Positions 12,201 to 60,688 of a DNA stretch of 64,000 nt are shown piece after piece (position 1 is the first letter of the stretch; each line of letters begins with the position of its first letter). Source of the DNA: Pecten maximus (taxonomy: Eukaryota); contig NC_047033.1 of NCBI RefSeq assembly GCF_902652985.1, positions 26,288,001-26,352,000 on the forward strand. Reading direction: 5' to 3'. The translations under genes and the position numbers were made by a program. The notes under the pieces were generated by a model that did no database searches, was not told the origin of the DNA, and saw only the letters and a list, made by a program, of their open reading frames with translations.

Positions 12201-15200
12201 ATAGTGCAACAAGTTGACGTGTGATAGTGCAACAAGTTGACGTGTGATAGTGCAACAAGTTGACGTGTGATAGTGCAACATAGCCGAAATCAGTCACTAT
12301 AGCTAACTGATTAGGGTGGCAATGTCTTCTGTTTTTGGGCACAGGGACTTGAGAATTTGTTATTGTCTACATGTATGTGGGCCTCCCTTAGTGTGTATAG
12401 CACATTTTCAGACGTTTTGGGGAGGCTAGATTAAAATTCGGTAAAAAAGACACCCCCGGTGTCATTCTGAAAATGTGCTATACAACATTTTCAGAATGAC
12501 ACCGGGGGTGTCATTTTACCGAATTTTAATCTAGCCTCCCCAAAACGTCTGAAAATGTGCTATACACACTAGGGGAGGCCCAAATACATGTAGACAATAA
12601 CAAATTCTCAAGTCCCTGTGGTTTTGGGGACGCCAGAGAACCCCATGTTGATCGCATGATGCGACTAAAGGTGTCTCCTGTAGAATCGGTGGATTTCTTA
12701 TGTCTCCTTTGCTCCAGGGGCCAAAAACTATCCGCCGCAGAATTAACAACACTTTCGTTCTTGATATTTGCCTGTGTGTCAGCTGTGTATTTGATAAATT
12801 GATATTATGTATCTTTTTTATGTTGTCTACAGTTTATAGATATTGTTTACCCTGTTTTGATATTATGTACAGTTTATAGATATTGTTTACCCCTCTGTTT
12901 TGATATTATGTACAGTTTATAGATATTGTTTACCCCACAGGTATCTGTTTTGATATTATGTACAGTTTATAGATATTGTTTACCCCACAGGTATCTGTTT
13001 TGATATTATATACAGTTTATAGATATTGTTTACCCCACAGGTATCTGTTTTGATATTATGTACAGTTTATAGATATTGTTTACCCCACAGGTATCTGTTT
13101 TGATATTATGTACAGTTTATAGATATTGTTTACCTCACAGGTATCTGTTTTGATATTATTTACAGTTGATAGATATTGTTTACCCCACAGGTATCTGTTT
13201 TGATATTATTTACAGTTTATAGGTATTGTTTACCCCACAGGTATCTGTTTTGATATTATGTACAGTTTATAGATATTGTTTACCCCACAGGTATCTGTTT
13301 TGATATTATGTACAGTTTATAGATATTGTTTACCCTACAGGTATCTGTTTTGATATTATGTACAGTTTATAGATATTGTTTACCCCACAGGTATCTGTTT
13401 TGATATTATGTACAGTTTATAGATATTGTTTACCCCTCTGTTTTGATATTATATACAGTTTATAGATATTGTTTACTCCACAGGTATCTGTTTTGATATT
13501 ATGTACAGTTTATAGATATTGTTTACCCCACAGGTATCTGTTTTGATATTATTTACAGTTTATAAATATTGTTTACCCCACAGGTATCTGTTTTGATATT
13601 ATGTACAGTTTATAGATATTGTTTACCCCACAGGTATCTGTTTTGATATTATATACAGTTTATAGATATTGTTTACCCCTCTGTTTTGATATTATGTACA
13701 GTTTATAGATATTGTTTACCCCTCTGTTTTGATATTATGTACAGTTTATAGATATTGTTTACCCCACAGGTATCTGTTTTGATATTATTTACAGTTTATA
13801 AATATTGTTTACCCCACAGGTATCTGTTTTGATATTATTTACAGTTTATAGATATTGTTTACCCCACAGGTATCTGTTTTGATATTATGTACAGTTTATA
13901 GATATTGTTTACCCCACAGGTATCTGTTTTGATATTATGTACAGTTTATAGATATTGTTTACCCCACAGATATCTGTTTTGATATTATATACAGTTTATA
14001 GATATTATGTACAGTTTATAGATATTATATACAGTTTATAGATATTGTTTTCCCCACAGGTATCTGTTTTGGATAGACTGGGTCGGTACTTTATACTCAC
14101 CTTCCGCCAGTATTGAGCGGTATGACATCAGTAGAAGCCGGCATGACGTCATTTTCAACATCACCAAGGAGATCTTACCAAATATGGGACGATCTATTGG
14201 CCTAGCTACGGACCTCCCGAACAAGCGTCTCTACTGGGTAGATGCAAAGTAGGTCAAATTTGGATTTCTATTTTTATCCTCCAATTAGATAAATAAATAA
14301 TTTCTGCTTGAAATAGAATACGATGCCATGAACTCTTCGATCTTTGATGCAGCTAATCTTAATATGTTTGTTGAAATAGGTGTAATCTGTTAATTTCAAA
14401 TTTCGAATCAAACCAAAACTTCCAAAGATACCTTATACACATGTTCGTATCTTCACCTGTAACAGGTGTGTTAATTAGGGTTTTGCATTGTTTAACGTCC
14501 TATCAACAGCTAAGGTCATTTAAGGACGGCCTCCCCTGTGTGTGTATGGTTTGGTTGTGTATTGTTTAACGTCCTATCAACAGCTAAGGTCGTTTAAGGA
14601 CGGCCTCCCCTGCGTGCAAGATGCCCGCGTGTGGTGAGTGTTTGTCTTGGGAGGCCGCGGAATGTTCGAATTTGTCTCGTGATAGCGCGGAACTGATGCT
14701 GACTTTATAGTGCTACCTCACTGGAGTATACTGCCGATTTCATGAAGCAGGGCACACCACTTGGCCACATTAAACTGACAGCGGGCAAACCAGTCGTCAC
14801 AGTCCTTAAATGCTGAGCTTTAAGCAGCACTGGGTTGAGTGTCGATGTGAACACGTACGTCACAATTAGAACTATACAATATTTGGAAAATGGTGGGAAA
14901 CTACATGTAGTTATCTCGGCGCAAGTATATAAATCTATACATGTTGTCTGATCACACCAGCGCTGTATCGAAAAGAAATGTGTTCAGTATCTATATAAAA
15001 AAAACAAAAACAAAAACAAAAACTGGCCCCGTATAAATCAATATATTGCCATCTTAAACCAGTAACTATTTCTATCAACTGTTGTACTCCAAACCGAACA
15101 AAGCTATTTACAAAAAGGTCCAGTATGGTTTAAAATACTACATTAGGGTAGCTCTGTGGTGTTCAATTGACCTAGATTTGTTTGGCATATGTCGTTGATT

Positions 15201-18200
15201 TCAAGCAAAGGCGCTTACTCTTCCGTACCCCTGGTCTTATTCTCCTTGTACGTGTTCTCATTGGAAATCTTTATTTTTGTTGGTATTTTAGCCTCGATTT
15301 ATTGGTTTCCGGTTTAATTCGTATTTCCTGTAGTGTTCAGTGACTTTTAGCGGGATTTCAATATGATTACACAACGGTACACGTACATTGCGTCTTGGAT
15401 TACGTTTTCTCAGCTTCAGTTGGACACGAAAGCTACTGGCAGTGCAGATCCGTTAATACTGCAGAAGACAGCTGGTGCAGAAAACGGCCCGTGATTCATC
15501 AAACACATTTTCTCGTCATAAAAACATGAAATATTATGTGGAAACTAGGCGGTTTCCCGCCGTTTTCCTATTTCTCAGGAACAGGGTAATTTCTAATGAA
15601 AGCTAATGACTGTTTCGTATTTTTTTCCGAAACAATAATCTATATGAAGGTCACACATAGAAATAAAAAAACATTTTGAAATCAGTGTAATAAACTGATA
15701 ATGTATACTCTCATTTACTTGACCTTAAAATCAAGGTCCTAGGGATGAAAGGTCATAGGGTAGAAAGGTCATGTGATTGAATTGTGTATCGGGTGTAATA
15801 TTTGAGTAGTTCTATCGTTCATTGATGAAACTGGTAAAAACGAGTGCTGCCTGCAACTAATTGGTCTTCACCTAGAGGTCAGGTCACAAAGACAGGGTCG
15901 GAGGTCATTTTCTTATTCATTGTATATTGAATATGTGGCGATATTAATTCTAGTTTATTAAAGGTCAAAGGTAACGTCACTACAATGCGGGTTGATGTTG
16001 TATGACGTTTCAGGGCTACGTGTATAGATACATTGGCTTTGGCAATTGGGGTCTGTACCATAGCATTAAGGTGTTTAACGATGAGACTGTTGTGAAGCTT
16101 ATAAAAGAAAGAAAATTCTGTTGGGTCGAAGATTAGTATAAATGCGATTTAATGTAACGTAACCTTGATGTATCCAGTGCTTACCGCCAAGGTCAATATC
16201 AAAGTAAACATCAAACTTCAATTAGAATTCATTCGAGTTGTCAAACGCTTAAGATTCTGTTCCACGTATCCACAGTGAAATAGTACCATAAAGCGGAAAT
16301 GACGTCAACGAGCTGTATCCCGACACGTTATACCTTAACTTGACATTTTTACCAGCAGGGTAAATACCTGTGTACAGCACTATTCCTGACGAGAGTTACC
16401 CTGCTGTGTCCCGATGGACTGGCATTAACAGCCTTCCCCGGTAATATAGTATCTCTCACAGCTAATGTTCCGTTCCTCTCTCGTGTTTCCATCAATCGTG
16501 CATCAGACTCTAACGTTAAAAGTTTGGGGTATTGGCAAACTTCTCAGACACATAAAAAGGCTGTGTAACAAATCAAATACACACCTTGTAAATTACTTAA
16601 TGACGTAATCCCGGGGCGAGTCTGGGACGTTTTCTGACGTAATCCAGTGTGAGTCTGGGGCGTTTTCTGACATAATCCAGTGTGAGTCTTGGACGTTTTC
16701 TGACATAATCCGAGGCGAGTCTGGGGCGTTTTCTGACATAATCCGAGGCGAGTCTGGGGCGTTTTCTGACATAATCCAGTGTGAGTCTGGGGCGTTTTCT
16801 GACATAATCCAGTGTGAGTCTGGGGCGTTTTCTGACATAATCCGAGGCGAGTCTAGGGCGTTTTCTGACATAATCCGAGGCGAGTCTGGGGCGTTTTCTG
16901 ACATAATCCAGTGTGAGTCTGGGGCGTTTTCTGACATAATCCAGTGTGAGTCTGGGACGTTTTCTGACATAATCCAGGGCGAGTCTGGGGCGTTTTCTGA
17001 CGTAATCCAGTGTGAGTCTGGGACGTTTTCTGACATAATCCAGGGCGAGTCTGGGGCGTTTTCTGACATAATCCGAGGCGAGTCTGGGACGTTTTCTGAC
17101 ATAATCCAGGGCGAGTCTGGGACGTTTTCTGACATAATCCAGTGTGAATCTGGGACGTTTTCTGACATAATCCAGTGTGAATCTGGGACGTTTTCTGATT
17201 TAGTTTTTGGTTTAGTATTGTTTAACGTCCTATCAACAGCTATGGTCATTCATGCATGCGTTAGGTGTTGAGCGCGCGGGTGTTTTGGGAGGCTGCGATA
17301 TGTTTGTGTTTGTCTCCATATGATCGACTTTATAGTGCTACCTCACTTAAGTATACTGCCGCAGACATCCAACAGGACACCCCACCCGGTCATATTATCC
17401 TGACAACAGGTAAACCAGTCGTCCCGCTCTCAAAATTCAGAGCATTAGCAGGAGTAGCAACTACTTTTTTTGAAAACGCCTCCGCTATGTCTCGGTCAGG
17501 GGCAGAACCCAAAGTCGTAATCCAGAACTTGGAGTCTTGGGAGTTTCCTGACGTAATGCAGGGCGAGTCTGGCGTTTACTGGCGTAAGTCTAGGAGAATC
17601 TAGGGGCGTTTTCTGACGTAATCCAGGCGGAATCTAGAGGCGTTTCCTGGCGTAAGCCTGGGCGAGTCTAGAGGGATTTTCGAACGTAATCCAGGGTGAG
17701 GCTGCGGCGTTTTCGGACTTATTCCAAGGTGAGGCTGGGGCGTTTTCGGACGTAATCCAGGGTGAGGCTGGGTCGTTTTCGGACGTAAGCCAAGGTGAGG
17801 CTGGGGTGTTTTCGGACGTAATCCAGGCCGAATCCTGAAAGTACGGGCTAACGTTTGTGGCTTTTAGCTTTACGTTTTACATGTACGAGCTGCTGTACAT
17901 GTTGCACGCACCTGTACCATCAAACATCACGCTGTGTTTTGTATTTTTGCTCTGTCTGGTATGTACAAATTGAAAGTAGCACACATCTTCCTTGATGGGC
18001 AAAAACACCTCTTGGTTTTATTCAGTGATTCTGACAACAACCCTGGTGTCGGCCGTGTTGTTCCGTAACCCTGATACCGTCTGTAGTGTGTACCGGATAA
18101 AAAGGTGTCCTAACTAAATGTATGTTTCAGAAATCAGACATTTATGCGCTTAGGCAAATACCATATTCCTTGTGGGAAGCACACCACGTGCGATTTGAAG

Positions 18201-21200
18201 TTGTTGCACACATTTTAAGAATAGCTTAGTGTGTACATCATTCTAACAATGGATACCGTATATGCACATCCATGGAATTTAAACACGTGGTTTGAAGAAT
18301 CCGAAGAATGTGTACCACAGGTTTTGTGGATTTTGACCTTTCCAGTTTTGGACGGTTTAGAGTAAAAATGGCACCCCGTAACCCGTTCTACTTTCAACTT
18401 TATATTTTTCATTATCTTAACAAAAATATGATGTGCAGTGAAAGCATATGTTCAAGAATTTAAAACAGTTGATCTTGCAAAGATTACGTAATATTTTGAT
18501 ATTTCGAAGTTAATCAGCTCTGAAAACTAAAATACACCTTAGGTTCAAATAGATCCGACTGTAACTAATGCTCAGGTCCGTGTGTTTCATAGCGATATGT
18601 GTCGGGTTTTTTTACTGCTTCCTCTTGCGATATGTAGTTCGGTAGATAATGGTTTACTGTGAATGTTTTTACTTTGACGATTTAAGGAGAGGTGCCGTCT
18701 TGGCGGTCATTTAATGACCAATTTACCCGATATGTCACGTTACATGTACAACGACATTGTCACATCACCACTATGTTTGTCAAGTTGAGAGAATCATGTA
18801 ACGACTTTTAGCCAAACCCTTCCTCGCGGGCCACACACTCAACTCAAAATACCCACGATGGAGCAGTGTCTAGAGATGCATTAGGTTGTTAAGAGTTGAA
18901 GAGAGAAGACGAAGAATTACAGACCTCAAATTCTCTACGCATTCTGTAGTCGCTTCTACAAAACGACGTGACGGGTACACCGGAATCCCTGCTGAAACGA
19001 CACATATGAATTATTCGAATTTGACTTATATACCTTTACTTACCACTCAGGAACGTATGGTCGTGTCGATTTTGATAGATAAATTTAACAGAATTACAAA
19101 ACCCATTAAAAATGTTATTTGGGCGCCAGATACTTTAACAGAATTACAAAACCAATTAAAAATGTTATTTGGGCGACAGATACTTTAACAGAATTACAAA
19201 ACCAATTAAAAATGTTATTTGGGCGCCAGATACTTTAACAGAATTACAAAACCAATTAAAAATGTTATTCGGGCGACCGATACTTTAACAGAATTACAAA
19301 ACCAATTAAAATATTTTTCAGGCGACAGATACTTTAACAGAATTACAAAACCCATTAAAAATGTTTTTCAGGCGACAGATACTTTAACAGAATTACAAAA
19401 CCAATTAAAAATGTTTTTGGGCGACAGATACTTTAACAGAATTACAAAACCAATTAAAAATGTTATTTGGGCGACAGATACTTTAACAGAATTACAAAAC
19501 CAATTAAAAATGTTATTCGGGCGACAGATACTTTAACAGAATTACAAAACCAATTAAAAATGTTATTTGGGCGACAGATACTTTAACAGAATTACAAAAC
19601 CAATTAAAAATGTTATTTGGGCGACAGATAATTTTAATGGCTATATTGTTATTTAATTGATAATTCCGAAACTTCTGTTTTACTCTCTGTGTATATTGCT
19701 ATTGTTAATCCGTTATTGGTTGGTCATCCATTACGTACATACAAAATATCACTTTCAGAAAGAGGGGCCGCGATATATTAGTCGGTTAGAGCGCTGGTCA
19801 TGTAGCCTCGCCGGGGCGAAGGTCTGAGGGGCGTGGTTCGACGCTCCCTACCTGTGTCGGTTTGTGTTTGAAATCTGAGAAACGGGTCGGTCTGTGGTGT
19901 TGTGGTTGTGTCTTTAGGCAGTACACTTTACCCTAATTACACAGGATACCATACGACGGGCCTCCCGTATGTTGTTCACTGAGGTAGTCACCAACTACTA
20001 CAAGTAAACCCCGCCTCAAAATGACTCTGGCTGTTTACGGGGCGATAAATCAAGTAAATAAACAAACAGTGTGACCTTTATTTTTATTAACAGGTCGGAG
20101 TCCGTGCAGACGGTCAGTTATGATGGCGCCTCATTCCGGGTCATAGTGAAGAGTAGGTTCCGAAATGGACTACAGAACCACAATTTCCTCACCGAACCCA
20201 GAAGTGTAGCAATTTTTGGGAAGAATGCATTCTGGTCAGATCGAGCCACTCAGTCCGTCGTCAAGGTTCGGGACACATAATATATATTACTACTTTCTCG
20301 TCAGTCAAAGGAATGAGTCTAACAAAATATGATAACTTAGTACTTTGTCAAATAAAATTGCTAAAAGGTACCTAATGAATGGGATGAATGGGGATATAGA
20401 TCGTCTACAGACTACAGTATAATCTGTAAAGGGAGAAAAATCCACCAAAATCTACAGAATATAATAGAAACATAAAAGTCCAGTATGTCTAAAGGGAGAT
20501 AAATCCACCAAAAAGTACAATACCTTGGTATATTATAGGGAGATAATTCCACCAGAAAATACAATATAAAATATGTAAAGGGAGATAATCCACAAAAAAT
20601 ACTGTATCATATGTAAAGGGAGATAAATTGGCCAAAAAATACAATATAATATGGAAAGGGAGATCATTCCACCAAAAGTAACAGTATAATATGCAAAGGG
20701 ATATTAATCCACCTAAAAGTATCCTCTATTAATGTACAGTATAATAAGGGATATTAATTCACAACAAATTACAGTATAATTTGTAAAGGGAGATAAATCA
20801 AACAAAAATACTGTATCATATGTAAAGGGAGATAAATCAACCAAAAAATACAACAATTTGTAAAGGGAGATAATCCTTCCAAAAAGTACAGCATGAAATA
20901 TGTAAAAGGAGATAAATCTGCAAAATGTAGTGGCAAAATATTGTTATTTTATATGTTACTTAGTCAAGCAAAGAATTGACACTAGATAGTGATAGTGCCA
21001 CCTAGTGAGTAATAAAAGTTGTCCCCCTGACTACGCTTATAGGAGACACACAATTATTTTTATGACAATGAAGTGTTATAGGCATAAGACAGTTTTATGT
21101 ATGATTGCATCTATCTGAAGTACATTTGATATCCAAAACTGGCTGAAATTAAGAGGTTTCAATTTATCTTCTCCAATATACTTAAAATCAATTTATGCCA

Positions 21201-21980: not shown

Positions 21981-22082
21981 TATCAATCTCTATAGAACAT
22001 TTAGTCTGAAATCTTAAATAATGGGCTATCTAATTCATCTAAAGAATATAACAGAAACCAGGCTCAGGTATGGTGAATCATG

Positions 22083-49300: not shown

Positions 49301-52300
49301 TCAAAATCCAGCTAATTTCTCACAAAATCTTAAATACCAGAGGAGCTGCTACATTATATGTTTAAAACCTGAAGAAAAATCTGTGTCTTCCTCGTCATGG
49401 CCCCACCCCCTGGGCCTTGACACACTGATTTTCAATGAATGTAGTTAGTAACTAGTACGGATGGCCCCACCCCCTGGGCCTTGACACACTGATTTTAAAT
49501 TGACATGGTTAGTAACTAGTATGTATGTCCCCACCCCCTGGGCCTTGACAAACAGATTTTCAATGGACGTGGTTAGTAACTAGTATGTATACTGTGCATG
49601 ACCCAAACTACATATTTAACAAAACACACAAAAGACTATGATGACAAACTGCACTGTCTTTGACCTTCATGCACGACTGCGTATATCTCCACACCTCAGT
49701 GATTAAACTTACTGAGATCCCCAGGGAAAAGTGATCAAAACTTAAGTTGTTTAGATATGGTCACCTGTAAGCTAAAGTGAGGTACCAGCACTTATCAAGA
49801 CAAGACTCAATAAGTATCGCGGAGCAGACACCCATTCCTGGTGGAGCAGTGACATAGATTTTTGTGCTAAAAGCATGAAAATACAGAAATGTAACAAGAA
49901 TTGACCTACTAATACATGATAGTTATGCATTATCAAACCAAACCCTTAAAAGCTGAGAGAGGAGATCTCAGGATAAAGAAAAGTTTATGTAGGACAGACA
50001 TAGATGCTTTAATCAAATTTTGATGGGTACTCAAAAAGGGGCATAACTCTAGGGGCTAAAGCTAAAGCACTGACAGGTCTGCCCCTTGGAAAGTAAAAAT
50101 AATGTGTAGTATCTCCAGTGCTCTTGACTACTTGTGAGTGACACAATAAATTACCTTGACTATATGTCATTAATAACACTTATAGTAATATTGGTGACCT
50201 TGACTACCTGTCAAAAACACTAGTGTCCTCAGTGACCTTGACTACTTGTGAGTGACATCATTAATGACCTTGACTACCTGACATTAATAACACTTATAGT
50301 AATCTTGGTAACCTTGACTACCTGTCAGTAGCACTAATGGCCTAAGTGACCTGTACAGCTAGCTGTCAACAACACTAGTGTCCTCAGTGACCTTGACTAC
50401 CTGTCAGTAACTCCAGTGTCCTCAGTGACCTTGACTACCTGTCAGTAACTCTAGTGTCCTCAGTGACCTTGACTACCTGCCAGTAACACTAGTGTCCTGA
50501 GTGACCTTGACTACCTGCCAGTAACACTAGTGTCCTGAGTGACCTTGACTACCTGACAGTAACCCCAGTATCCTCAGTGACCTTGACTATAGCTACCTGT
50601 CAGTATAACTAGTGTCCTCAGTGACCTTGACTACCTGTCAGTAACACTTGTGTCCTCAGTGACCTTGACTACTTGTCAGAAACCCTAGTGTCCTCAGTGA
50701 CCTTGACTACCTGTCAGTATCACTAGTATCCTCAGTGACCTTGACTACCTGACAGTAACCCCAGTATCCTCAGTGACCTTGACTATAGCTACCTGTCAGT
50801 ATAACTAGTGTCCTCAGTGACCTTGACTACCTGTCAGTAACACTTGTGTCCTCAGTGACCTTGACTACTTGTCAGAAACCCTAGTGTCCTCAGTGACCTT
50901 GACTACCTGTCAGTATCACTAGTATCCTCAGTGACCTTGACTACCTCTCAGTAACACTTGTGTCCCCAGTGACCTTGACTACTTGTCAGAAACCCTAGTG
51001 TCCTCAGTGACCTTGACTACCTGTCAGTATCACTAGTATCCTCAGTGACCTTGACTACCTCTCAGTAACACTTGTGTCCTCAGTGACCTTGACTACTTGT
51101 CAGAAACCCTAGTGTCCTCAGTGACCTTGACTACCTGTCAGTATCACTAGTATCCTCAGTGACCTTGACTACCTCTCAGTAACACTTGTGTCCTCAGTGA
51201 CCTTGACTACTTGTCAGAAACCCTAGTGTCCTCAGTGACCTTGACTACCTGTCAATAACACTTGTGTCCTCAGTGACCTTGATTACCTGTCAGTAACACT
51301 AGTGTCCCAAGTGACCTTGACTACCTGTCAGTAACACGTGTGTCCTCATTGACCTTGACTACCTGTCAGTAACACTAATGTCTTCAGTGACCTTGACTAC
51401 CTGTCAGTAACACTAGTGTCCTGAGTGACCTTGACTACCTGTCAGTAACACTAATGTCTTCAGTGACCTTGACTACCTGTCAGTAACACTAGTGTCCTGA
51501 GTGACCTTGACTACCTGTCAGTAACACTAGTGTCCTCAGTGACCTTGACTACCTGTCAGTAACTCAAGTGTCCTCAGTGACCTTGACTACCTGTCTGTAA
51601 CTCTAGTGTCCTCAGTGACCTTGACTACCTGTCAGTAACTCTAGTGTTCTCAGTGACCTTGACTACTTGTCAGTAACACTAGTGTCCTGAGTGACCTTGA
51701 CTACCTGTCAGTAACTCTAGTGTCCTCAGTGACCTTGACTACCAGTCAGTAACACTAGTGTCCTGAGTGACCTTGACTACCTGTCAGTAACACTAATGTC
51801 CTCAGTGACCTTGACTACCTGTCAGTAACACTAGTGTCCTGAGTGATCTTGACTACCTGTCAGTAACACTAGTGTCTTCAGTGACCTTGACTACCTGTCA
51901 GTAACACTAATGTCTTCAGTGACCTTGACTACCTGTCAGTAACACTAATGTCTTCAGTGACCTTGACTACCTGTCAGTATCACCAGTGTCCTCAGTGACC
52001 TTGACTACCTGTCAGTAACACCAGTGTCCTCAGTGACCTTGACTACCTGTCAGTAACTCCAGTGTCCTCAGTGACCTTGACTACCTGTCAGTAACCCCAG
52101 TGTCCTCAGTGACCTTGACTACCTGTTGAAATCAACAGATGGAGTTTGGAATATTATCTGAATTTATTGTCAGGAAAGGAGTAGTTGGCCATAATCATCT
52201 GGATTTCAAAGCACATGCAAATCATCTTCCCTGTTTTAATTTGCATGTTATTGAATCAATTTAAACACAAATTAATTTACTGACAGAAAACAAATAAGTA

Positions 52301-55300
52301 GTTAAATAAGTACATCTGAGCACAGTGGCTGAATCAGAGGCTGAAGGATGTTTTTACCTACAAACACTAAATCAACTTACTTACCTATATAATATATAGA
52401 TATGTAAATTAATTATGCAAATGTTATTTAGTGCCAACAGACACCACTCAGATTTAACTGTATTCTGTTGATGTCCTTTGTTCATGCTGCATTAAATTTT
52501 ATGGCATTAGAAATCAACGAAATCCTAAAAAGCCAGTCAGCAGTTAGTAATTACCAACGACAAGCAATAACGATCAATTAACAAATTAATGATTACAACA
52601 ATGATAACGATACTGATCGCAAATAAGATCACGTCCTGATAAACGAGCTGCTCAAATATAGCGTGGATCATAACATGGGGTACATATTTCTGTTTCTTTT
52701 GACAATAGACAATCGTAATCAATAAAACATTTTAAAAATGGCCATAAAACCATGAAAACTTCATTATAACTAAATCAAATGTATAGTTTTCATTTTCAGA
52801 TTTTTATCACATGTAACTTTTCAGATTATGAGCACCGTGACCTCATACACTAATTTAGCAGACATAACTCCCCTAACCTCTATTCACTAATTTAGCTTAG
52901 AGACAGGTAACTTTCCAGACAAAAGAGTCCTAACCTCTGTTCACTAATTTAGCTTAGAGACAGGTAACTTTCCAGATTAAGAGAGGTCATGACCTTGGTT
53001 CAGTAACTTTCCAGATTAAGAGAGATCATGACCTTGGTTCAGTAATTTAGCAGACATAACTTTCCAGATTAGAGAGGTCATGACCTTGGTTCAGTAATTT
53101 AGCAGACATAACTTTCCAGATTAAGAGAGGTCATGATTTAGGTTCACTAGTACTGCAGATGCAGTTGCATCATCATGCATCTGATAATTATGCAAGGAAA
53201 AGGGAAGCTCTTACCATTTCCACAACTGTCAACCACTAGTGAAGGGAGACAACTCAGTTTTAAGATAAATTACAATGTTTTCATAATAACTGACACAAAC
53301 ACTGACAAAATCTGCATAAATTATCATAATCTGCATAAATTAAAGTATAGAAATATACCTATTTATTTGCCTTTTTTTTTTTTTTGTAAAAACCCATTCA
53401 CCTTCATGGCTCACATCTAGTTTCCTCATTTTTACATCACCAACATCATCAGATAACCTTTTGATGTAAAACGCTAATACCAAATGAACTAATAGCGATT
53501 ATTTGTCAATAGTCTTAGCATTTTAATATAAATAGATGTAAAAATGCAATGAAACATTGAAAGAGTTCTTTATCTTTTCCCCCCTTAGGCAACATGTTGC
53601 AAAAACTAACCTACTTCATCCAGAATTTGAATATATTTGTATTTCTTTTGCCAACAAAGTTTGATCAAGTTTTTGTACAGCACTTTTTGAGAGGTCAAAT
53701 TCACATTGAGAAGATGATAACAGTTGTTGCACTATGTCTAAAACTTATTTCATGAGCTAAAAAAATCCCTTGTATTTGACTTAAAAAATGAAGAATAAAG
53801 GATTCAGAAGATTGTAAAAAATTTCACTTTTCAACATCTTGCTATTCATACTTAAAGACTTACCCGGTGGTTCTTGTGGCCAAGGGGAGTTAACCCATTC
53901 TTGAAGGAAGTAGGTAAATCGGACAGCAACAGTGACCTTTGGCCTTGGGGTTATTTGTGTAGCCTACAATCAAAGCAGCATTATCTAAATGGCTATAAAT
54001 TTGAATTTCAGGTACATCACATATACAGAATGATAGAACTGAATTAGAAAAAAGTCAAAACACACTGGCTAATTGGTTACTGCAGAGGTACGTCCAACAG
54101 ACCGGCTAAATGGTTACTGCAGAGGTACTTCCGACAGACTGGCTAAATGGTTACTGTGGAGGTACGTCCAACAGACTGGCTAAATGGTTATACTGCGTGT
54201 TACTATTTATAACATGCAAGTTTAGCTTTAAACACGTCCAACAGACCGGCTAAATGGTTTTACTGCGAAGTACTTTTTATAACTTACAAGATTAGCTTGA
54301 AACACGTCAAACAGACCGGCTAAATGGTTATACTATGAAAGTTTTTTATAACTTACAAGTTTAGCTTTAAACACGTCCAACAGACCAGCTAAATGGTTAT
54401 ACTGAGGTGGTACCCTTTGGAACTGTATGACATCAAAGTTGATGGTGGTCCCAGACATCAAACATATCCCAGAATACATCTGTCTCCAAAAGTGCTGGAC
54501 TTGAACAAACACTGGTACAGGACTGAAATGAAGAAATTCAAATTCTGTCTTTTTTTGCATTTCTGACTCCATTATCACAAAGAAATTGTGAAAATATTTC
54601 ATCAATATCAAGGATTCTGTAAGTGTCAATCTAGTGCTTTCATTGTTGTAATTGACATTCTATTTTATCTGTACAAAAAACAAAACAAGGCACTCTGATT
54701 ACATCTTTACAAATCAGATACAGGGAGTTAATTTACATGAACAGTAAATAATTCACTCTATGCTGGAAACTCCAGGGCATGAATTTAAGTTCATACAACA
54801 AAACTTATACAGCGAAGTATTGCAAACTATATAATTATACAGAGAAGTGCTGTAAACTTATACAGAGAAGTGCTGTAAACTTATACAGAGAAGTGCTGTA
54901 AACTTATACAGAGATGTGTTGTAAACTTATACAGAGAAGTGTAAACTTATACAGAGAAGTGATGTAAACTTATACAGAGAAGTAATGTAAACTTATACAG
55001 AGAAGTGCTGTAAACTTATACAGAGAAGTGCTGTAAACTTATACAGAGAAGTGCTGTAAACTTATACAGAGAAGTGCTGTAAACTTATACAGAGAAGTGC
55101 TGTAAATTTATACAGAGAAGTGTAAACTTATACAGAGAAGTGTAAACTTATACAGAGAAGTGCTGTAAACTTATACAGAGAAGTGATGTAAACTTATACA
55201 GAGAAGTGCTGTAAACTTATACAGAGAAGTGCTGTAAACTTATACAGAGAAGTGTTGTAAACTTATACAGAGAAGTGCTGTAAACTTATACAGAGAAGTG

Positions 55301-58300
55301 CTGTAAACTTATACAGAGAAGTGCTGTAAACTTATACAGAGAAGTGCTGTAAACTTATACAGAGAAGTGCTGTAAACTTATACAGAGAAGTGTAAACTTA
55401 TACAGAGAAGTGTTGTAAACTTATACAGAGAAGTACTGTAAACCTTTACAGAGAAGTGCTGTAAACTTATACAGAGAAGTGCTATAAACTTATACAGAGA
55501 AGTGTTGTACACTTATACAGAGAAGTGCTGTACACTTATACAGAGAAGTGTAAACTTATACAGAGAAGTGTAGTAAACTTATACAGAGAAGTGTAAACTT
55601 ATACAGAGAAGTGCAGTAAACTTATACAGAGAAGTGTAAACTTATACAGATAAGTGTTGTAAACTTATACAGAGAAGTATAAACTTATACAGAGAAGTGC
55701 TGTAAACTTATACAGAGAAGTGCTGTAAACTTATACAGAGAAGTGTAGTAAACTTATACAGAGAAGTGTAAACTTATACAGAGAAGTGTAGTAAACTTAT
55801 ACAGAGAAGTGTAAACTTATACAGAGAAGTGTTGTAAACTTATACAGAGAAGTGCTGTAAACTTATACAGAGAAGTGTAGTAAACTTATACAGAGAAGTG
55901 CTGTAAACTTATACAGAGAAGTGCTGTAAACTTATACAGAGAAGTGCTGTAAACTTATACAGAGAAGTGTAAACTTATACAGAGAAGTGTTGTAAACTTA
56001 TACAGAGAAGTACTGTAAACCTTTACAGAGAAGTGCTGTAAACTTATACAGAGAAGTGCTATAAACTTATACAGAGAAGTGTTGTACACTTATACAGAGA
56101 AGTGCTGTACACTTATACAGAGAAGTGTAAACTTATACAGAGAAGTGTAGTAAACTTATACAGAGAAGTGTAAACTTATACAGAGAAGTGCAGTAAACTT
56201 ATACAGAGAAGTGTAAACTTATACAGATAAGTGTTGTAAACTTATACAGAGAAGTATAAACTTATACAGAGAAGTGCTGTAAACTTATACAGAGAAGTGC
56301 TGTAAACTTATACAGAGAAGTGTAGTAAACTTATACAGAGAAGTGTAAACTTATACAGAGAAGTGTAGTAAACTTATACAGAGAAGTGTAAACTTATACA
56401 GAGAAGTGTTGTAAACTTATACAGAGAAGTGCTGTAAACTTATACAGAGAAGTGTAGTAAACTTATACAGAGAAGTGCTGTAAACTTATACAGAGAAGTG
56501 CTGTAAACTGTCAGAGAAGTGCTGTACACTTACACAGAGAAGTAGTGTATAATTATACAGATAAATGCTGTAAACTCACCAGCCAGCATTACTCAGGGCT
56601 ATGGAGACTGAACTCAACAGCAGTTTGATTCGACTTTCACTGTCGATAGCGTCAGACTTACTGGAGGGTGCTATCACAACAAACTCCTGTAAGCCGTACC
56701 TGTAATGATATGATCATTTCATCCTTAGGAATAACTCTTATTCAACTTTAGGATACACCCATCTGTCTATATAGGATATTACACACTTTCACCCTTCTGT
56801 CTATGTATATCAATTCTATGCTGTTTTAGTTTTAGCTTGATCCTCAGGGTTAATTAGTTTTAGAATATATGTACACTTGTCTTAAATTGATAATACATAT
56901 ATAAGTTAAAAAAAAGATTATCATAAAATTGGAAATTTATACCAGAGTATTAAGTTCAAATAAATATATAATTGACTGGAAAAATTATATCTATGGTGAA
57001 AACAGTGTTAAGAAGGTATTGCTAACCAATACTAATCTGGTCAAATAATTGGCATTTGTCAGTAAAGAGATACAGAAAAAGATCTTGACCTTGATATTTT
57101 ACCTCAGTGTGCATATTTTTGTAAATTGAACATCCAAATTTCATGTAAATCCGTCAATAAATACTTAAGTTATCAGCCGGGAACTAAATTCATGGACAGA
57201 CAGAGTGATTACTATAGTGCACCTGTATCGCCAATATGGGGCCCTTATAAAGAAACAGTGTATGAAGTTTGAATTTCAAAGGTTGACATAAAAACTTACT
57301 GTCTGGAAAGCAAATCTATCTTTAGTCACAGTGACCTAATTCTTTGACCTTTTGACCTGAAATCCCTAGCAAGCAGTTTGAGTTCTATCTGTCCTTTAAC
57401 TTATTAGTTATTGACTGGAAATGATGATGACAGATGGAATGATAGATAAACAACGGCATTACAGTATCCTCTTCTGGGCCTAGTTGTTCAAAAGGTGATT
57501 CACTTAATCACTTGATTAGTGAAAATTTCATTTCTCATTTGTTGCAAAACCTGTCTGTATATCGTCTTGAAATTATGCCAGTTGGAAGAGAACAAAGAAC
57601 AACAGAATTTCATAAAGTTTTGTCAAGTAAGTTCTACCAGAAACTTTTATATCAAGATTTGAAAAATGTTGTTGAAATCTAGCTAATCACCTTTTGAACA
57701 ACCGGGCCCAGATCTCAAATCGGGGAGACAGACAAAGTGTACTTACAACCGAGACAGGAAGTGTGCCTTAGAAGGGAAGTCATTCTCGGTATTCATCATA
57801 TCCATCATCACTGTAGGTATCACGTCTGTAATAAAATCGAAGGTACACCATTACAGGGGCTAAGCTCTCTGTATTATGTTGGTGGACAGTTAAATTTGTT
57901 TAGAGGAACAAGGACGTATCTCCAACATGGAGTGCTTAGAAGTAAAGGGTCGTATCTCAAATTTATCAATTTTTAGATTTTATTAAATTACAACTACGAG
58001 TGAGATTTTGTAATAGAATTTGTACATTATATAAAATTAAATGGTCTAATTCTGTTAAAATACTACCTGATTTAAAAGAATTAGACAATTTCCATTGATA
58101 TAAAGTACATATTCTATAAGAAAAACTCAGTCAGAATTGTAATTTATCAAAATAAAAAAATTGATAAATTTGAGATACGGTCCTTTTCTTCTAAGCACTC
58201 CATGTTGGAGATACATCCCTGTTCCTCTAAACAAACAGTAGGCAAGGTGGCGGAAGTATTGTATGTCAATAAACAGATGAAACACTGTACATGACCCCAC

Positions 58301-60688
58301 CACCTCTAGATGTTTTCCTGTTACAGGTGGCGGTAGTATCGTGTGACGATAGATAGAAGTATGTACAGGACCCCACCACCTCTAGATGTTTTCCTGTCAC
58401 AGGTGGCGGTAGTATCGTGTGACGATAGATAGAAGTATGTACAGGACCCCACCACCTCTAGATGTTTTCCTGTCACAGGTGGCAGTAGTATCCTGTGTCG
58501 ATAGACAGAAGAAGAAGCTCTGTATAGGACCCCACCACCTCTAGGTGTTTTCCTGTCGCAAACTTGATGTTCCTAAAAGCTATAACACAGACTTTAACAT
58601 AGAAGATCCTAGAAATTTCACCAGGAATTTATTTACCTTCTTTTTCTTCGACCTCCTCAATTTCCTCCCCCTCCTCGTCTGGACTCTGTCTCAGGTCCGG
58701 AGTCTGGTCAGGGGAGGAAGCAGGTTTTAAATAGTGATGAGACACCATAAACTTGAAAGTCGGCAAATGTGATCTCTTCCGTTTTCTCTATCCAGGTTCC
58801 ATTGTTCTGATCAGCCTGAAATAAGAGAAAGCTTGTGTAATGTACAGATATATTTCAGAAATGTAAGTTTTGCTTACAAAAATTTCTCATGTACATGCAT
58901 GTACACCCTTCAGAGAACAATACATTGGTATCATTAACACTCATTTCCAATTAGCACTATTAAATCAGGACTATTTAGTGACATATATTAACCCTTTTGT
59001 AGAATATGATACTTGTACAAGAGGTTTGGTGTATCTAACTTTATTACACGTATAAATAAAATGACATGACCCAGGCATTAAACCCCTCGGGACAGGATGG
59101 GACCCTAGGATCAATCCTAGTACTAGAATATTGTAGCTATTCAAGATATGATCTAGGCACTCCAGTCAATCAGGATGTCATACTCACCATGGTGACAGGA
59201 TGTTGTACTCACCTTGGTGACAGGATGTCATACTCACCTTGGTGACAGGATGTCATACTCACCTTGGTGACAGGATGTCATACTCACCTTGGTGACAGGA
59301 TGTCATACTCACCATGGTGACAGGATGTCATACTCACCATGGTGACAGGATGTCATATTCACCTTGGTGACAGGATGTCATACTCACCATGGTGACAGGA
59401 TGTCATACTCACCTTGGTGACAGGATGTCATACTCACCTTGGTGACAGGATGTTGTACTCACTATGGTGACAGGATGTCAAACTCACCTTAGTGACAGGA
59501 TGTCATATTCACCTTGGTGACAGGATGTCATACTCACCTTGGTGACAGGATGCCCTACTCACCTTGGTGACATGATGTCCTACTCACCATGGTGACAGAT
59601 GTCCTACTCACCTTGGTGACAGGATGTCATACTCACCATGGTGACAGGATGTCATACTCACCATGGTGACAGGATGTCCTACTCACCTTGGTGACAGGAT
59701 GTCCTACTCACCATGGTGACAGATGTCCTACTCACCTTGGTGACAGGATGTCATACTCACCATGGTGACAGGATGTCATACTCACCTTGGTGACATGATG
59801 TCCTACTCACCATGGTGACAGATGTCATACTCACCTTAGTGACAGGATGTCATACTCACCATGGTGACAGGATGTTGTACTCACCTTGGTGACAGGATGT
59901 TGTACTCACCATGGTGACAGGATGTCAAATTCACCATGGTGACAGGATGTTGTACTCACCTTGGTGACAGGATGCCGTGGCTGAACACTGACTAGTTTCC
60001 ACTCGTGAAGAATTTCTTCCAATCTGGCCACAAACCTAAAACCATGGATGCATGTAATTAGTGTACACAAACCTAAAACCATGGGTTACACAAACCTAAA
60101 ACCAGTGGCGCACAAATTATGTTACTTGTGACCTTTGACCCAGGGACATTGACCTTTGACCAATGCAAGAGGCATTGCCTTTGGTCAGTTGACTCCATGT
60201 TAAATTCCAACAAACATTGTTTCGCAGCTATAGTATCATCACAAAATGATGATAATTAAAAAAAATAAAAATTTGACCTTGATTTTTAACCCAGTGAATT
60301 TGATCTTTGACCTGGTAGTTAGATCAGTTGACTTTTTGTTTACTAGGTAAATTGTGACCAACGTTGCTTTATAGTGTCATCACAAAATGTTCATCAATGA
60401 AAAAATACAATATTTGACCTTGACCTTGATATTTGACCTCAACGTGTATTTTTGTGAACTGAACATCTTGACCAAACTTCAAGTACACTGTAAACCGGTC
60501 GATGAATACTAAAGTTATCATGCTAGGAACAATATTTATGGATGGACGGACAGACAGAACTATTATTATTGTATATTCTGTATATAGGGCGTCTGTATCT
60601 CCGATACCAATTCCTAAATATATGACTATACCAACCTCTCCCATTCTGAGGCGGTCGTAAAATCTGTGATTTCAAACACGTCTGCATC
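28087..60688 (-). CDS. RAB3GAP1: Rab3 GTPase-activating protein catalytic subunit (5'-partial; 23 exons; one +1 frameshift)
   Basis: Colinear motifs recalled from vertebrate RAB3GAP1: VFEITDFTTASEWER, NDFP.KAH, SDLDPLQAPQWSV, LWQEFVLEMRFRWEN, MLNCCIERK, YIPVTQEPAPMTED, MQSACLMSDMESFKAANPGC, PARRQKRLFDDTKEAEK, LAGAFSTDTTF*. All introns GT-AG. Exon total is 3220 nt (3n+1). Confidence 0.95.
28303..28907. repeat. 42-44 bp array copying the last-exon acceptor of RAB3GAP1
   Basis: Minus-strand unit contains ttgtattttgacag|gaaatcaacatg. Confidence 0.93.
29122..29340 (-). CDS. RAB3GAP1: RAB3GAP1 exon (IARAKSLKSKF..IHKLFIAAQK)
   Basis: cctcag| ... AAG|gtgggt. Confidence 0.92.
29800..29900 (-). CDS. 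RAB3GAP1: RAB3GAP1 exon (DSDIPKLKDVLDNLISRASKV)
   Basis: tttcag| ... GAG|gtcagt. Confidence 0.85.
30075..30262 (-). mobile_element. SINE-like family C (second, decayed copy at ~35965-36115)
   Basis: ggaaaccggagtacctgggggaaaaccc body; reverse B-box ggaatcgaactc. Confidence 0.6.
30341..30437 (-). CDS. RAB3GAP1: RAB3GAP1 exon (VLHFLSSMKPANL..IHSAIIKV)
   Basis: caacag| ... G|gtaaga. Confidence 0.9.
30737..30858 (-). CDS. RAB3GAP1: RAB3GAP1 exon with catalytic-arginine region (PARRQKRLFDDTKEAEK)
   Basis: aaacag| ... AAG|gtatgg. Confidence 0.93.
31024..32801. mobile_element. HINE/Helentron-associated element carrying a 155-bp satellite array
   Basis: Starts aacaaga; ~9.5 x 155 bp; (ggac)n microsatellite; terminal hairpin tagcccaccatc..gatggtgggcta. 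Confidence 0.8.
32903..34530. mobile_element. Second copy of the same HINE-like element
   Basis: Same structure; ~8.5 x 155 bp. Confidence 0.8.
34898..35003 (-). CDS. RAB3GAP1: RAB3GAP1 exon (AANPGCTLIDFVRWYSPRDWIEEE)
   Basis: tttcag| acceptor; donor taken as T|gtatgt, though a phase-compatible A|gtaaaa lies 9 nt earlier. Confidence 0.85.
35075..35650 (-). mobile_element. SINE-like family A, longest copy
   Basis: Homologous to the 14488 and 17200 copies. Confidence 0.65.
35722..35803 (-). CDS. RAB3GAP1: RAB3GAP1 exon (LGTSSEGAQLRARMQSACLMSDMESFK)
   Basis: atgcag| ... AAG|gtaaaa. Confidence 0.93.
36170..38364. mobile_element. HINE-like element, second family, with ~161-bp satellite array
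   Basis: Starts aacaagaggcccatgggcc; 161-bp units; (cgcacga)n microsatellite; terminal hairpin taggtcatcctgaccc..gggtcagatgaccta. Confidence 0.8.
38385..38587. repeat. 31 bp tandem repeat, ~6 copies
   Basis: Recurring ccatatcttttagtcgactgg. Confidence 0.85.
38687..39342 (-). CDS. RAB3GAP1: RAB3GAP1 large exon (MLNCCIERK..EDEFFEC..YIPVTQEPAPMTED)
   Basis: ORF 38683..39342; tttcag| ... AG|gtagag. Confidence 0.95.
39510..40927. mobile_element. Non-autonomous DNA transposon with 16-bp TIR and 6-bp TSD
   Basis: catacttgccaacttt ... aaagttggcaagtatg, flanked by acatac on both sides. Confidence 0.8.
41128..41377. repeat. 55 bp array copying a RAB3GAP1 donor
   Basis: acctgtagtttttggtagatcagaca at 41131, 41186, 41241, 41296, 41351. 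Confidence 0.95.
41353..41407 (-). CDS. RAB3GAP1: RAB3GAP1 exon (IEPGAPNLGSCLIYQKLQ)
   Basis: gtacag| ... CAG|gtacgt. Confidence 0.88.
41750..42490. repeat. ~62 bp array copying a RAB3GAP1 exon end plus donor
   Basis: gacacttaccctttaataaaacac..cccagcgg.acctca, about 12 times. Confidence 0.92.
42441..42613 (-). CDS. RAB3GAP1: RAB3GAP1 exon (GGLRGVAQLWQEFVLEMRFRWEN)
   Basis: tcccag| ... GG|gtaagt. Confidence 0.93.
43133..43258 (-). CDS. RAB3GAP1: RAB3GAP1 exon (LLFPDA.. acidic linker)
   Basis: tcatag| ... AGG|gtaatg. Confidence 0.85.
43612..43806. repeat. 58 bp tandem repeat x3
   Basis: caaagatcaacttcactttcaatctctacacccccggaatatgtccaacctaaatgtt. Confidence 0.9.
43944..44107 (-). CDS. RAB3GAP1: RAB3GAP1 exon (DISQALQRLTEP..)
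   Basis: ttgtag| ... GAG|gtgagt. Confidence 0.88.
44112..45415. repeat. 24 bp minisatellite abutting a RAB3GAP1 acceptor
   Basis: (accaataatacatcaatccatcaa)n. Confidence 0.95.
45886..45978 (-). CDS. RAB3GAP1: RAB3GAP1 exon (HYLQSFVKHGYRQESTEELL)
   Basis: ataaag| ... G|gtaggt; phases fit both neighbours. Confidence 0.8.
46361..46434 (-). CDS. RAB3GAP1: RAB3GAP1 exon (DLDPLQAPQWSV..PNCLL)
   Basis: tttcag| ... G|gtatga. Confidence 0.92.
47260..47328 (-). CDS. RAB3GAP1: RAB3GAP1 exon (ELRLACTWPSLSEDMIVENQNY)
   Basis: tttcag| ... AG|gtaact. Confidence 0.9.
47293..47750. repeat. 80 bp array copying a RAB3GAP1 acceptor plus exon start
   Basis: cagttcact(gaa/tag)acagggtaatttttata every 80 bp. 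Confidence 0.95.
48217..48298 (-). CDS. RAB3GAP1: RAB3GAP1 exon (LPFGASEDPV)
   Basis: ccttag| ... AG|gtgagc. Confidence 0.9.
50150..52126. repeat. 38 bp minisatellite
   Basis: (gaccttgactacctgtcagtaacactagtgtcctcagt)n. Confidence 0.95.
53864..53963 (-). CDS. RAB3GAP1: RAB3GAP1 exon (VAVRFTYFLQEW..WPQEPP)
   Basis: ttgtag| ... G|gtaagt. Confidence 0.9.
54063..54405. repeat. Diverged array copying a RAB3GAP1 exon end plus donor
   Basis: Recurring aaacacgtccaacagaccggctaaatggttatact. Confidence 0.85.
54357..54522 (-). CDS. RAB3GAP1: RAB3GAP1 exon (PVPVFVQV..YNHLAGLLDVFKAKL)
   Basis: tttcag| ... CTT|gtaagt; within ORF 54333..54629. Confidence 0.92.
54820..56578. repeat. 20-23 bp minisatellite abutting a RAB3GAP1 donor
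   Basis: (gctgtaaacttatacagagaagt)n. Confidence 0.95.
56580..56699 (-). CDS. RAB3GAP1: RAB3GAP1 exon (YGLQEFVVIAP..LLLSSVSIALSNAG)
   Basis: ttacag| ... TG|gtgagt. Confidence 0.92.
57474..57711. mobile_element. MITE (PIF/Harbinger-like GGCC ends)
   Basis: ctgggcctagttgttcaaaaggtgatt ... aatcaccttttgaacaaccgggcccag. Confidence 0.7.
57747..57825 (-). CDS. RAB3GAP1: RAB3GAP1 exon (VIPTVMMDMMNTENDFPSKAHFLSR)
   Basis: ttacag| ... TT|gtaagt. Confidence 0.9.
57895..58235. mobile_element. MITE with ~100-bp TIRs
   Basis: tttgtttagaggaaca..tatctccaacatggagtgcttagaag versus cttctaagcactccatgttggagata..tgttcctctaaacaaa. Confidence 0.75.
58245..58557. repeat. ~76 bp tandem repeat, ~4 copies
   Basis: Recurring gaccccaccacctctagatgttttcctgt. 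Confidence 0.85.
58637..58815 (-). CDS. RAB3GAP1: RAB3GAP1 exon containing +1 frameshift (GTWIEKTEEITFADF/KFMVSHHYL)
   Basis: tttcag| ... G|gtaaat; homology switches frame at ~58756. Confidence 0.85.
59170..59975. repeat. 25 bp array copying a RAB3GAP1 donor, ~32 copies
   Basis: Minus-strand unit catcctgtcaccaag|gtgagtatga. Confidence 0.95.
59960..60035 (-). CDS. RAB3GAP1: RAB3GAP1 exon (FVARLEEILHEWKLVSVQPRHPVTK)
   Basis: ttttag| ... AAG|gtgagt. Confidence 0.9.
60636..60688 (-). CDS. RAB3GAP1: RAB3GAP1 exon (DADVFEITDFTTASEWE)
   Basis: tttcag| ... AG|gttggt. Confidence 0.9.

What the first reader, a model, noticed from the sequence alone, without database searches (positions are those of the whole stretch)
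12826..60105. Splice-junction-seeded tandem arrays: minisatellites built from the exon/intron boundary they touch, in both genes
Seen: about ten arrays have a unit that spans an exon/intron junction, with the exon-side copy being the functional splice site. Acceptors: 14060, 28314, 29340, 47328, 60035. Donors: 21396, 41353, 42441, 54357, 59960. Two more arrays abut a site and share its sequence (44107, 56580). Units are unrelated to each other (17-80 bp), so each arose locally, and all extend into the intron. By my count this is close to half of the non-transposon arrays in the window, while junction-flanking DNA is a small fraction of it. Inference: either a junction-targeted duplication process (co-transcriptional R-loops or breaks, slippage, or RNA-templated repair at splice sites) or a strong survival filter. 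Either way the spliceosome must ignore rows of near-perfect decoy sites. I do not know of a description of this as a systematic genome feature.
Basis: partly seen in the sequence, partly recalled or inferred. Interest (0 to 1): 0.9.

Follow-up and report, generated by a model that had tools for sequence, protein, structure and literature searches.

The report
Splice-junction minisatellites ("mirages") in scallop
In this king scallop window, about nine intron tandem repeats are built from the exon/intron boundary they touch, so real splice sites sit next to rows of look-alike sites; this repeat type is known as "mirages" in amphioxus, and here it is mostly what an extremely repeat-rich genome would give by chance.

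Summary
Homology fixes 54 splice junctions in the two genes, and RNA contigs confirm eight of them. The genes are Rab3GAP catalytic subunit on the minus strand and an Fz+YWTD gene on the plus strand. Nine arrays have a unit that spans a junction: 14060, 21396, 28314, 29340, 41353, 42441, 47328, 54357 and 59960. Site 60035 is a weak case, and 44107 and 56580 only abut. Units are unrelated, decoy sites score as high as the real ones, and RNA contigs from three studies use the exon-proximal donor at 41353 and 42441.

The kind is already described: "mirage" minisatellites in amphioxus and the human F7 intron-7 VNTR. The genome's size and scaffold count match the Pecten maximus assembly. In 151 independent junctions from it I found 8 further mirages (about 5%). 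Expected counts under random birth of arrays are 3.2-4.5 in the window (observed 8-9) and about 4.7 in the sample (observed 8). That is at most a roughly 2-fold excess. There is no excess over the adjacent 50 bp of intron, and the window was picked after the fact. No array lies inside the sampled coding matches.

Best reading: very frequent local tandem duplication, removal from exons, and tolerance at junctions. This is a new phylum for a known kind. Another first-stage note reports the same pattern elsewhere in this genome.

The parts
28090..60688 (-). Rab3 GTPase-activating protein catalytic subunit gene. 22 coding exons are mapped (E1 60688-60636 to E22 28314-28090). The exon with the start codon was not found.
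   Evidence: phmmer and cluster name; tblastn exon map; boundaries read; Pfam PF13890 and PF19533; RNA joints
2694..21977 (+). Fz (Frizzled cysteine-rich domain) plus YWTD-repeat gene. Exons: 2694-3249, 8221-8418, 9441-9645, 14060-14248, 20094-20265, 21297-21396, about 21819-21977.
   Evidence: Pfam Fz and Ldl_recept_b; ORFs and splice sites read. The last exon is not verified.
12835..14071 (+). Acceptor mirage at 14060. 50-bp unit, about 24 copies. The unit holds the acceptor plus the first 12-14 exon bases.
   Evidence: Phase and the motif 'DPIEG|YLFWIDW' fit only the exon-proximal copy.
21387..21429 (+). Donor mirage at 21396. 17-bp unit, 2.5 copies, with one decoy donor of equal score.
28303..28907 (-). 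Acceptor mirage at 28314 (last exon). 44-bp unit, 13.9 copies, 12 exon bases in the unit.
   Evidence: The homolog P0001 reads straight across the E21/E22 join.
29329..29730 (-). Older, diverged acceptor mirage at 29340. 72-bp units, 4.3 copies. A 22/23-nt copy of the junction lies at 29707-29729.
41115..41389 (-). Donor mirage at 41353. 55-bp unit, 5 copies, 37 exon bases in the unit.
   Evidence: The RNA joint 41353 to 39342 is seen in three runs.
41736..42477 (-). Donor mirage at 42441. 62-bp unit, 11.9 copies, about 37-40 exon bases in the unit.
   Evidence: The RNA joint 42441 to 41407 is seen in three runs.
47289..47750 (-). Acceptor mirage at 47328. 80-bp unit, 5.4 copies. TRF starts the array at 47318; unit homology reaches about 47289 inside the exon.
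54059..54404 (-). Donor mirage at 54357. 70-bp unit, 3.5 copies, about 48 exon bases in the unit.
59171..59974 (-). Donor mirage at 59960. 25-bp unit, 32 copies. 15 decoys score the same as the authentic AAG|GTGAGT.
60031..60106 (-). Weak acceptor duplication at 60035. Three copies of a 13-mer holding the acceptor, spaced 37 and 23 bp apart.
44111..45415 (-). 24/48-bp array that abuts the acceptor at 44107. It ends 3 nt from the exon and has no exon sequence in the unit.
54805..56576 (-). 23-bp array of 78 copies that abuts the donor at 56580. It starts 3 nt into the intron and has no exon sequence in the unit.

Best explanation
These are 'mirage' minisatellites. In this scallop genome, short local tandem duplications arise in introns at a very high rate and then grow into arrays. 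The mechanism, slippage or unequal exchange of 17-120 bp, is inferred. A fraction set mainly by unit length times junction density happens to straddle an exon/intron boundary.

Such a duplication leaves one intact exon and one intact splice site at the exon end of the array. All extra copies lie in the intron. The duplication therefore survives, while duplications inside exons are removed by selection.

Splicing stays correct because site choice depends on position and context, not on the motif alone. The first donor after the exon body is used, as shown experimentally for the human F7 VNTR. The acceptor contiguous with the exon body and its downstream donor is used. Any use of a decoy would mostly give frameshifted or stop-containing RNA that is lost.

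Shown here: the anatomy, the local origin, decoy strength, correct donor choice at two arrays, presence across the genome, and absence from exons. Inferred: the duplication mechanism, the rule for acceptor choice, and near-neutrality.
For: Anatomy and local origin:
- Nine junction-spanning arrays have unrelated units.
- Exon boundaries are fixed by homology and RNA.

Splice-site choice:
- Exon-proximal donors are used at 41353 and 42441 in contigs of runs from three studies.
- Decoys are as strong as the authentic sites.

Genome-wide presence:
- The same structures occur at eight unrelated loci in myosin, kinesin, TCP1 and SNF2 genes: L024, L033, L043, L049, L066, L067, L084 and L087.

Statistics:
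- Observed counts lie within about 2-fold of random-birth expectation: 8 vs 4.45 or 3.2 in the window, and 8 vs 4.7 in the sample.
- There is no excess over the adjacent intron: 17 vs 12.
- No array lies inside 25.2 kb of coding matches against 14 expected.
- The window is 42% array against 15.6% in the sampled loci, which accounts for its many cases.
- The exon share of the unit ranges from about 0.06 to 0.78, as random placement predicts.

Precedent: PMC3087553, PMC3902484 and PMC1557585.
Against: Pooled counts exceed the whole-intron expectation (15-17 vs 9.1, P = 0.01-0.05). For units of 100 bp or less the independent sample gives 6 vs 2.3 (P = 0.03), although that run overstates the at-risk length. 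Arrays also look about 1.6-1.7 times denser in the first 80-120 bp of introns (P = 0.09 and 0.13). A modest real bias towards exon edges is therefore not excluded.

Acceptor choice was not checked with RNA. Low-level decoy use cannot be seen in contigs. Copy numbers were not confirmed in raw long reads.
Confidence: 0.7

Rival explanations
1. A junction-targeted or exon-edge-targeted mutational process raises the birth rate of tandem duplications right at splice junctions. Candidates are co-transcriptional R-loops or breaks, a chromatin boundary at exon edges, or RNA-templated repair.
For: The pooled excess is about 1.7-1.9 fold over the whole-intron hazard. It is 2.6 fold for units of 100 bp or less in the independent sample. 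Arrays trend denser within about 100 bp of exons.
Against: There is no excess relative to the adjacent 50 bp of intron (17 vs 12, P = 0.23). The window was chosen after the pattern was seen. Interspersed repeats make up about 26% of the genome (PMC7191990). They dilute deep-intron array density and so inflate the apparent excess; my small repeat screen could not correct for this. The junction sits anywhere in the unit, with an exon share of 0.06-0.78. Donors and acceptors are equally affected.
Confidence: 0.17
2. The arrays are functional. They might be selected rows of decoy or recursive splice sites (AG|GT in the 14060 unit) that tune splicing kinetics, isoform choice or NMD-coupled expression.
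For: Each unit of the 14060 array carries CAG|GTA, the form of a recursive splice site. Decoys keep full-strength motifs.
Against: Units are unrelated between sites and arrays are young (84-100% identity). Copy number runs from 2 to 32 with no pattern. The frequency is near the neutral expectation. Assembled transcripts show only the normal joints at the two arrays tested. In amphioxus and in human F7 the extra sites are silent.
Confidence: 0.06
3. The arrays, or their copy numbers, are artefacts of long-read assembly or polishing, or the exons were mis-called.
For: The assembly is PacBio-based and polished. One apparent 1-nt frameshift sits in exon 3 of the Rab3GAP gene.
Against: Exon limits agree with homologs and with RNA joints. 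Contigs of independent runs lie inside the 62-bp array and beside it, at 41651-41814, 42129-42210 and 42235-42343. The same architecture recurs at eight other loci on other chromosomes.
Confidence: 0.04

Closest known systems
'Mirage' minisatellites of amphioxus (Adh3, troponin C, globins BflGb6/BflGb9, PGBD5)
   Same: These are tandem repeats whose unit spans an exon-intron boundary, at either donors or acceptors. Units are 10-160 bp, the extra copies lie in the intron, many carry AG/GT signals, and mRNA splicing is normal (PMC3087553; PMC3902484).
   Different: The amphioxus cases are single loci in a cephalochordate. Here the organism is a bivalve mollusc, with nine cases in two neighbouring genes and a measured rate of about 5% of sampled junctions. 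Length instability, the other hallmark in amphioxus, was not tested here.
Human F7 intron 7 37-bp VNTR
   Same: The first repeat element spans the exon 7 donor. The authentic donor is followed by identical pseudo-sites that stay silent, and the most upstream donor is chosen (PMC1557585). The RNA joints at 41353 and 42441 show the same outcome.
   Different: The F7 mechanism was shown by mutagenesis in mammalian cells, whereas here it is inferred. F7 has only donor decoys. Here acceptor arrays of up to 24-25 copies exist as well, and the F7 rule does not cover them.
Intron gain by tandem duplication across AG|GT proto-splice sites (Rogers model)
   Same: A local tandem duplication creates duplicate splice signals (discussed in PMC3087553; papers listed).
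   Different: In that model the duplicate sites become a new intron inside an exon. Here the duplications straddle an existing junction and no new intron or exon is seen.

Membership tests
mirage minisatellite | The tandem repeat unit contains both exon and intron sequence of one splice junction. | tested here: met
   Nine arrays in the window and eight in independent loci.
mirage minisatellite | The authentic junction is the terminal copy and the extra copies lie in the intron. | tested here: met
   True of all cases. No array lies inside 25.2 kb of coding matches.
mirage minisatellite | Normal mRNA splicing is kept despite the duplicated signals. | tested here: met
   RNA contigs from three studies join 41353 to 39342 and 42441 to 41407. 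The other sites are supported only by homolog continuity. Rare decoy use cannot be seen in contigs.
mirage minisatellite | Length instability or polymorphism between haplotypes or tissues. | not tested
   The single read-laying run was used on RNA.
F7-type donor VNTR (most upstream donor wins) | [quoted passage not shown] | tested here: inconclusive
   Pseudo-donors score the same as the authentic sites and are not used in contigs. Their functionality needs minigene tests.
recursive splice sites | A juxtaposed acceptor and donor (AG|GT) is used stepwise, giving intermediate junction reads. | tested here: inconclusive
   The motif is present in the 14060 unit. No RNA was laid there.
   The excess over whole-intron nulls is 1.7-2.6 fold. 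It is 1.4 fold and not significant against the adjacent intron. Only 205 junctions were available.

The most novel reading that the evidence does not exclude
Minisatellite births in Pecten maximus are truly about 2-fold more frequent at and just beside splice junctions than deeper in introns, reflecting a transcription-, splicing- or chromatin-boundary-coupled mutational bias. Whether or not that holds, junction arrays are effectively neutral. Extrapolating the roughly 5% rate suggests the genome may carry very many rows of full-strength decoy donors and acceptors, which would form a natural large-scale test of splice-site choice, especially for acceptors.
Probability: 0.2. Interest if true: 0.65.

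Novelty: new member of a known kind. Interest (0 to 1): 0.4.

Why it matters
The finding shows that 'mirages', so far described locus by locus in amphioxus and once in man, are common in a mollusc: about 1 in 20 sampled junctions, and 1 in 6 in this window. They occur at close to the rate expected if they were harmless. That gives a first quantitative baseline. It says that splice-site choice in this animal is robust to dozens of identical competing sites on either side of an exon. It also flags a practical hazard for gene prediction and RNA-seq alignment in repeat-rich invertebrate genomes. The published P. maximus repeat table lists only 0.99% simple repeats, whereas TRF arrays make up 15.6% of the sampled genic loci.

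Tried and rejected
The single call went to 39250-44105 instead, so no acceptor mirage and not the 59960 array were tested with RNA.

2. One joint in run X5 (39342 to 41133) at first looked like use of the fifth decoy donor. Its 23-nt side is identical in all five copies, so it says nothing.

The orthologous Mizuhopecten locus could not be fetched, and no cross-species comparison of the introns was possible.

The kinase, P450 and helicase hits gave no sequence, and the sample stayed at 151 junctions.

5. An automatic strand guess for the loci was wrong for several of them. I replaced it with the strands printed by the searches.

6. The run restricted to units of 100 bp or less lets the at-risk length pass through large arrays, so it overstates the enrichment. 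I report it only as an upper bound.

7. A screen for dispersed repeats by all-against-all BLAST of the 360 kb in hand found only 4-9% repeat. That is too insensitive to correct for transposon dilution.

8. L038 (doubtful coding match) and L090 (array ends exactly at the AG) met or nearly met the automatic rule but were not counted as verified mirages.

All protein searches were made exon by exon, by reference.

Full report
**What the window is.** The window is G000:C19:26288001-26352000 of a genome of 918,306,378 bases in 3,983 scaffolds. These are exactly the figures published for the Pecten maximus assembly (PMC7191990). The best homolog of the minus-strand gene is a Mizuhopecten yessoensis protein named Rab3 GTPase-activating protein catalytic subunit-like. 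TRF finds 43 merged arrays covering 27.1 kb of the 64 kb, or 42%.

**Gene models.** I searched exon by exon, by reference, and built no joined model. tblastn with seven Rab3GAP1 homologs maps 19 exons on the minus strand. Three more exons were found as open frames. I read every boundary against its AG/GT and checked the phase. This gives 22 exons from 60688 to the stop at 28090. The plus-strand gene has an Fz domain exon (2694-3249) and YWTD exons. Pfam confirms Fz, Ldl_recept_b, Rab3-GTPase_cat and Rab3-GAP_cat_C. In all, 54 junctions are fixed. RNA contigs from runs of three studies show the joints 41353/39342, 42441/41407, 43133/42613 and 43944/43258, exactly as modelled.

**The observation.** I used a fixed rule: a TRF array must cover at least 3 nt on both sides of a junction. 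Eight junctions meet it.
- Acceptors: 14060 (50 bp x24), 28314 (44 bp x14) and 47328 (80 bp x5.4).
- Donors: 21396 (17 bp x2.5), 41353 (55 bp x5), 42441 (62 bp x12), 54357 (70 bp x3.5) and 59960 (25 bp x32).

Site 29340 is a ninth, older case. The junction aligns to each 72-bp unit, with exon bases included in three of five units. A 22/23-nt copy of the junction lies at the far end of the array. Site 60035 has three loose copies of a 13-mer. Sites 44107 and 56580 only abut, at 3 nt, and their units hold no exon sequence. Units of different arrays are unrelated. The description therefore stands, apart from the share. It is 9 of 37 arrays inside the genes, or 12 of 37 counting the weak and abutting cases, not close to half.

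**Decoys and splice choice.** I scored sites with position weight matrices built from the window's own 54 sites. Most decoys equal the authentic site. Examples are 15 of 31 at 59960, all 4 at 41353, and 28 of 29 at the independent locus L043. In assembled transcripts the exon-proximal donor is used at 41353 and 42441, and the whole array is skipped. One contig joint, to 41133, has a 23-nt side that is identical in all five copies and is uninformative. For acceptors, only homolog continuity supports the proximal copy, for example across E21/E22 in P0001.

**Is it more than chance?** The right target is not 'junction-flanking DNA'. It is unit length times the number of junctions, measured on array-free sequence.
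- *Collapsed-coordinate null.* Each array's unit is placed at random in the gene with arrays collapsed, and exon-internal placements are disallowed. This gives 3.22 expected, and P(8 or more) = 0.011.
- *Hazard null.* The rate at which a first array starts per bp of array-free intron is 1.79 per kb, and the mean unit is 51 bp. This gives 4.45 expected, P = 0.083.

The window was picked because the pattern was seen in it, so these values overstate the case.

**Independent sample.** I drew exon matches to Pfam myosin, kinesin, TCP1, SNF2, P-type ATPase and ABC families from the same genome, each with 1.5 kb flanks. After dropping two haplotig duplicates, I placed splice sites with the matrices. 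That left 151 usable junction ends.

Nine arrays met the rule. Reading them gives eight verified mirages.
- Donors: L033 (70 bp x3.6), L043 (26 bp x29.5), L066 (46 bp x3, 100% identical) and L024 (117 bp).
- Acceptors: L067 (40 bp x2.1), L084 (61 bp x25.5), L087 and L049.

L038 is doubtful, and at L090 the array ends exactly at the AG. The pattern is thus genome-wide, at about 5% of junctions. The hazard in these flanks is 0.57 per kb and the mean unit minus 5 is 54.5 bp, which gives 4.7 expected. P = 0.10 for 8 and 0.19 for 7.

Pooled with the window, the count is 15-17 against 9.1 expected (P = 0.045 to 0.012). Against arrays that start in the adjacent intron strip of equal width the count is 17 vs 12 (P = 0.23). 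Arrays seem 1.6-1.7 times denser in the first 80-120 bp of introns, but neither data set reaches significance. Restricting to units of 100 bp or less gives 6 vs 2.3 in the sample (P = 0.03). That run lets the at-risk length pass through large arrays and is biased upwards. Interspersed repeats, 26% of the genome, dilute deep-intron density. I could not mask them.

In contrast, no array lies inside 25.2 kb of coding matches, where 14 would be expected (P = 6e-7). The sampled loci are 15.6% array against 42% for the window, which explains why the window holds so many cases.

**What it is.** The literature already has this kind. [quoted passage not shown] They cite the Adh3 and other loci, report normal splicing, and suggest the phenomenon may be general in cephalochordates (PMC3087553). 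The same is reported for lancelet PGBD5 and troponin C (PMC3902484). The human F7 intron 7 VNTR begins with a unit that spans the exon 7 donor. Its identical pseudo-donors are functional but silent, because the most upstream site is taken (PMC1557585). No paper in the library links minisatellites, splice sites and bivalves. The P. maximus genome paper lists only 0.99% simple repeats.

**Mechanism.**
- *Shown:* local origin, terminal position of the authentic copy, full-strength decoys, correct donor choice at two arrays, purge from exons, and frequency within about 2-fold of random birth.
- *Inferred:* arrays start as slippage or unequal-exchange duplications of 17-120 bp anywhere in the transcribed region. 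Those inside exons are lost. Those across a junction leave the exon and one site intact, and so behave like intronic arrays.
- *Donor choice* follows the first-site rule known from F7.
- *Acceptor choice* probably rests on exon definition, that is, contiguity with the exon body and its donor. NMD would hide errors.

The exon share of the unit ranges from 0.06 to 0.78 and both site types are hit equally, as random placement predicts.

**Verdict.** The strong interpretation, a junction-targeted process and an undescribed feature, is not supported. A modest bias towards exon edges remains open and needs the genome-wide test. This is a new phylum and a first rate estimate for a known kind. Another first-stage note (s1-784576) reports the same pattern on another piece of this genome. 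I did not examine that piece.

Noticed in passing
window 58752-58761 (minus strand), exon 3 of the Rab3GAP gene: There is an apparent +1 frameshift. In the frame set by exon 2 the exon runs into TGA at 58710-58708, while homologs follow the next frame after 'ITFADF'. One T fewer in the TTT at 58758-58756 would reconcile the two frames. This is either a homopolymer error in the assembly or a real variant.
   Followed up: partly
window 31197-34395: The 155-bp array of about 20 copies is a dispersed family, not a local product. Units 93-97% identical form arrays at L015, L019, L053 and L062 on other chromosomes. It is probably carried by a transposon.
   Followed up: partly
window 39412-41031: This intron stretch is covered by many high-depth contigs in all four RNA runs, with word depth up to about 500 and many loose ends. 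It behaves like a multi-copy, transcribed repeat rather than part of this gene.
   Followed up: no
window 60688 and upstream: The first mapped Rab3GAP exon begins at an acceptor and has no in-frame ATG. The exon with the start codon lies further upstream and was not located.
   Followed up: no
window 9247-9450: The 42-bp x4 array ends 22 nt before the acceptor of YWTD exon 3. The stretch between looks by eye like a decayed unit that supplies the 'tttctag' acceptor, but alignment is not above shuffles. Two in-frame acceptors, at 9441 and 9450, are possible.
   Followed up: partly
all mirages, window and loci: Donor mirages tend to carry a larger exon share of the unit (mostly 0.55-0.78) than acceptor mirages (about 0.15-0.47). 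The sample is small and was not tested. Selection against decoy acceptors that carry much exon sequence could explain it.
   Followed up: no
L066:1690-1825: The three 46-bp copies across a TCP1 donor are 100% identical, so this is a very recent duplication. It is a good locus at which to look for presence/absence polymorphism.
   Followed up: no
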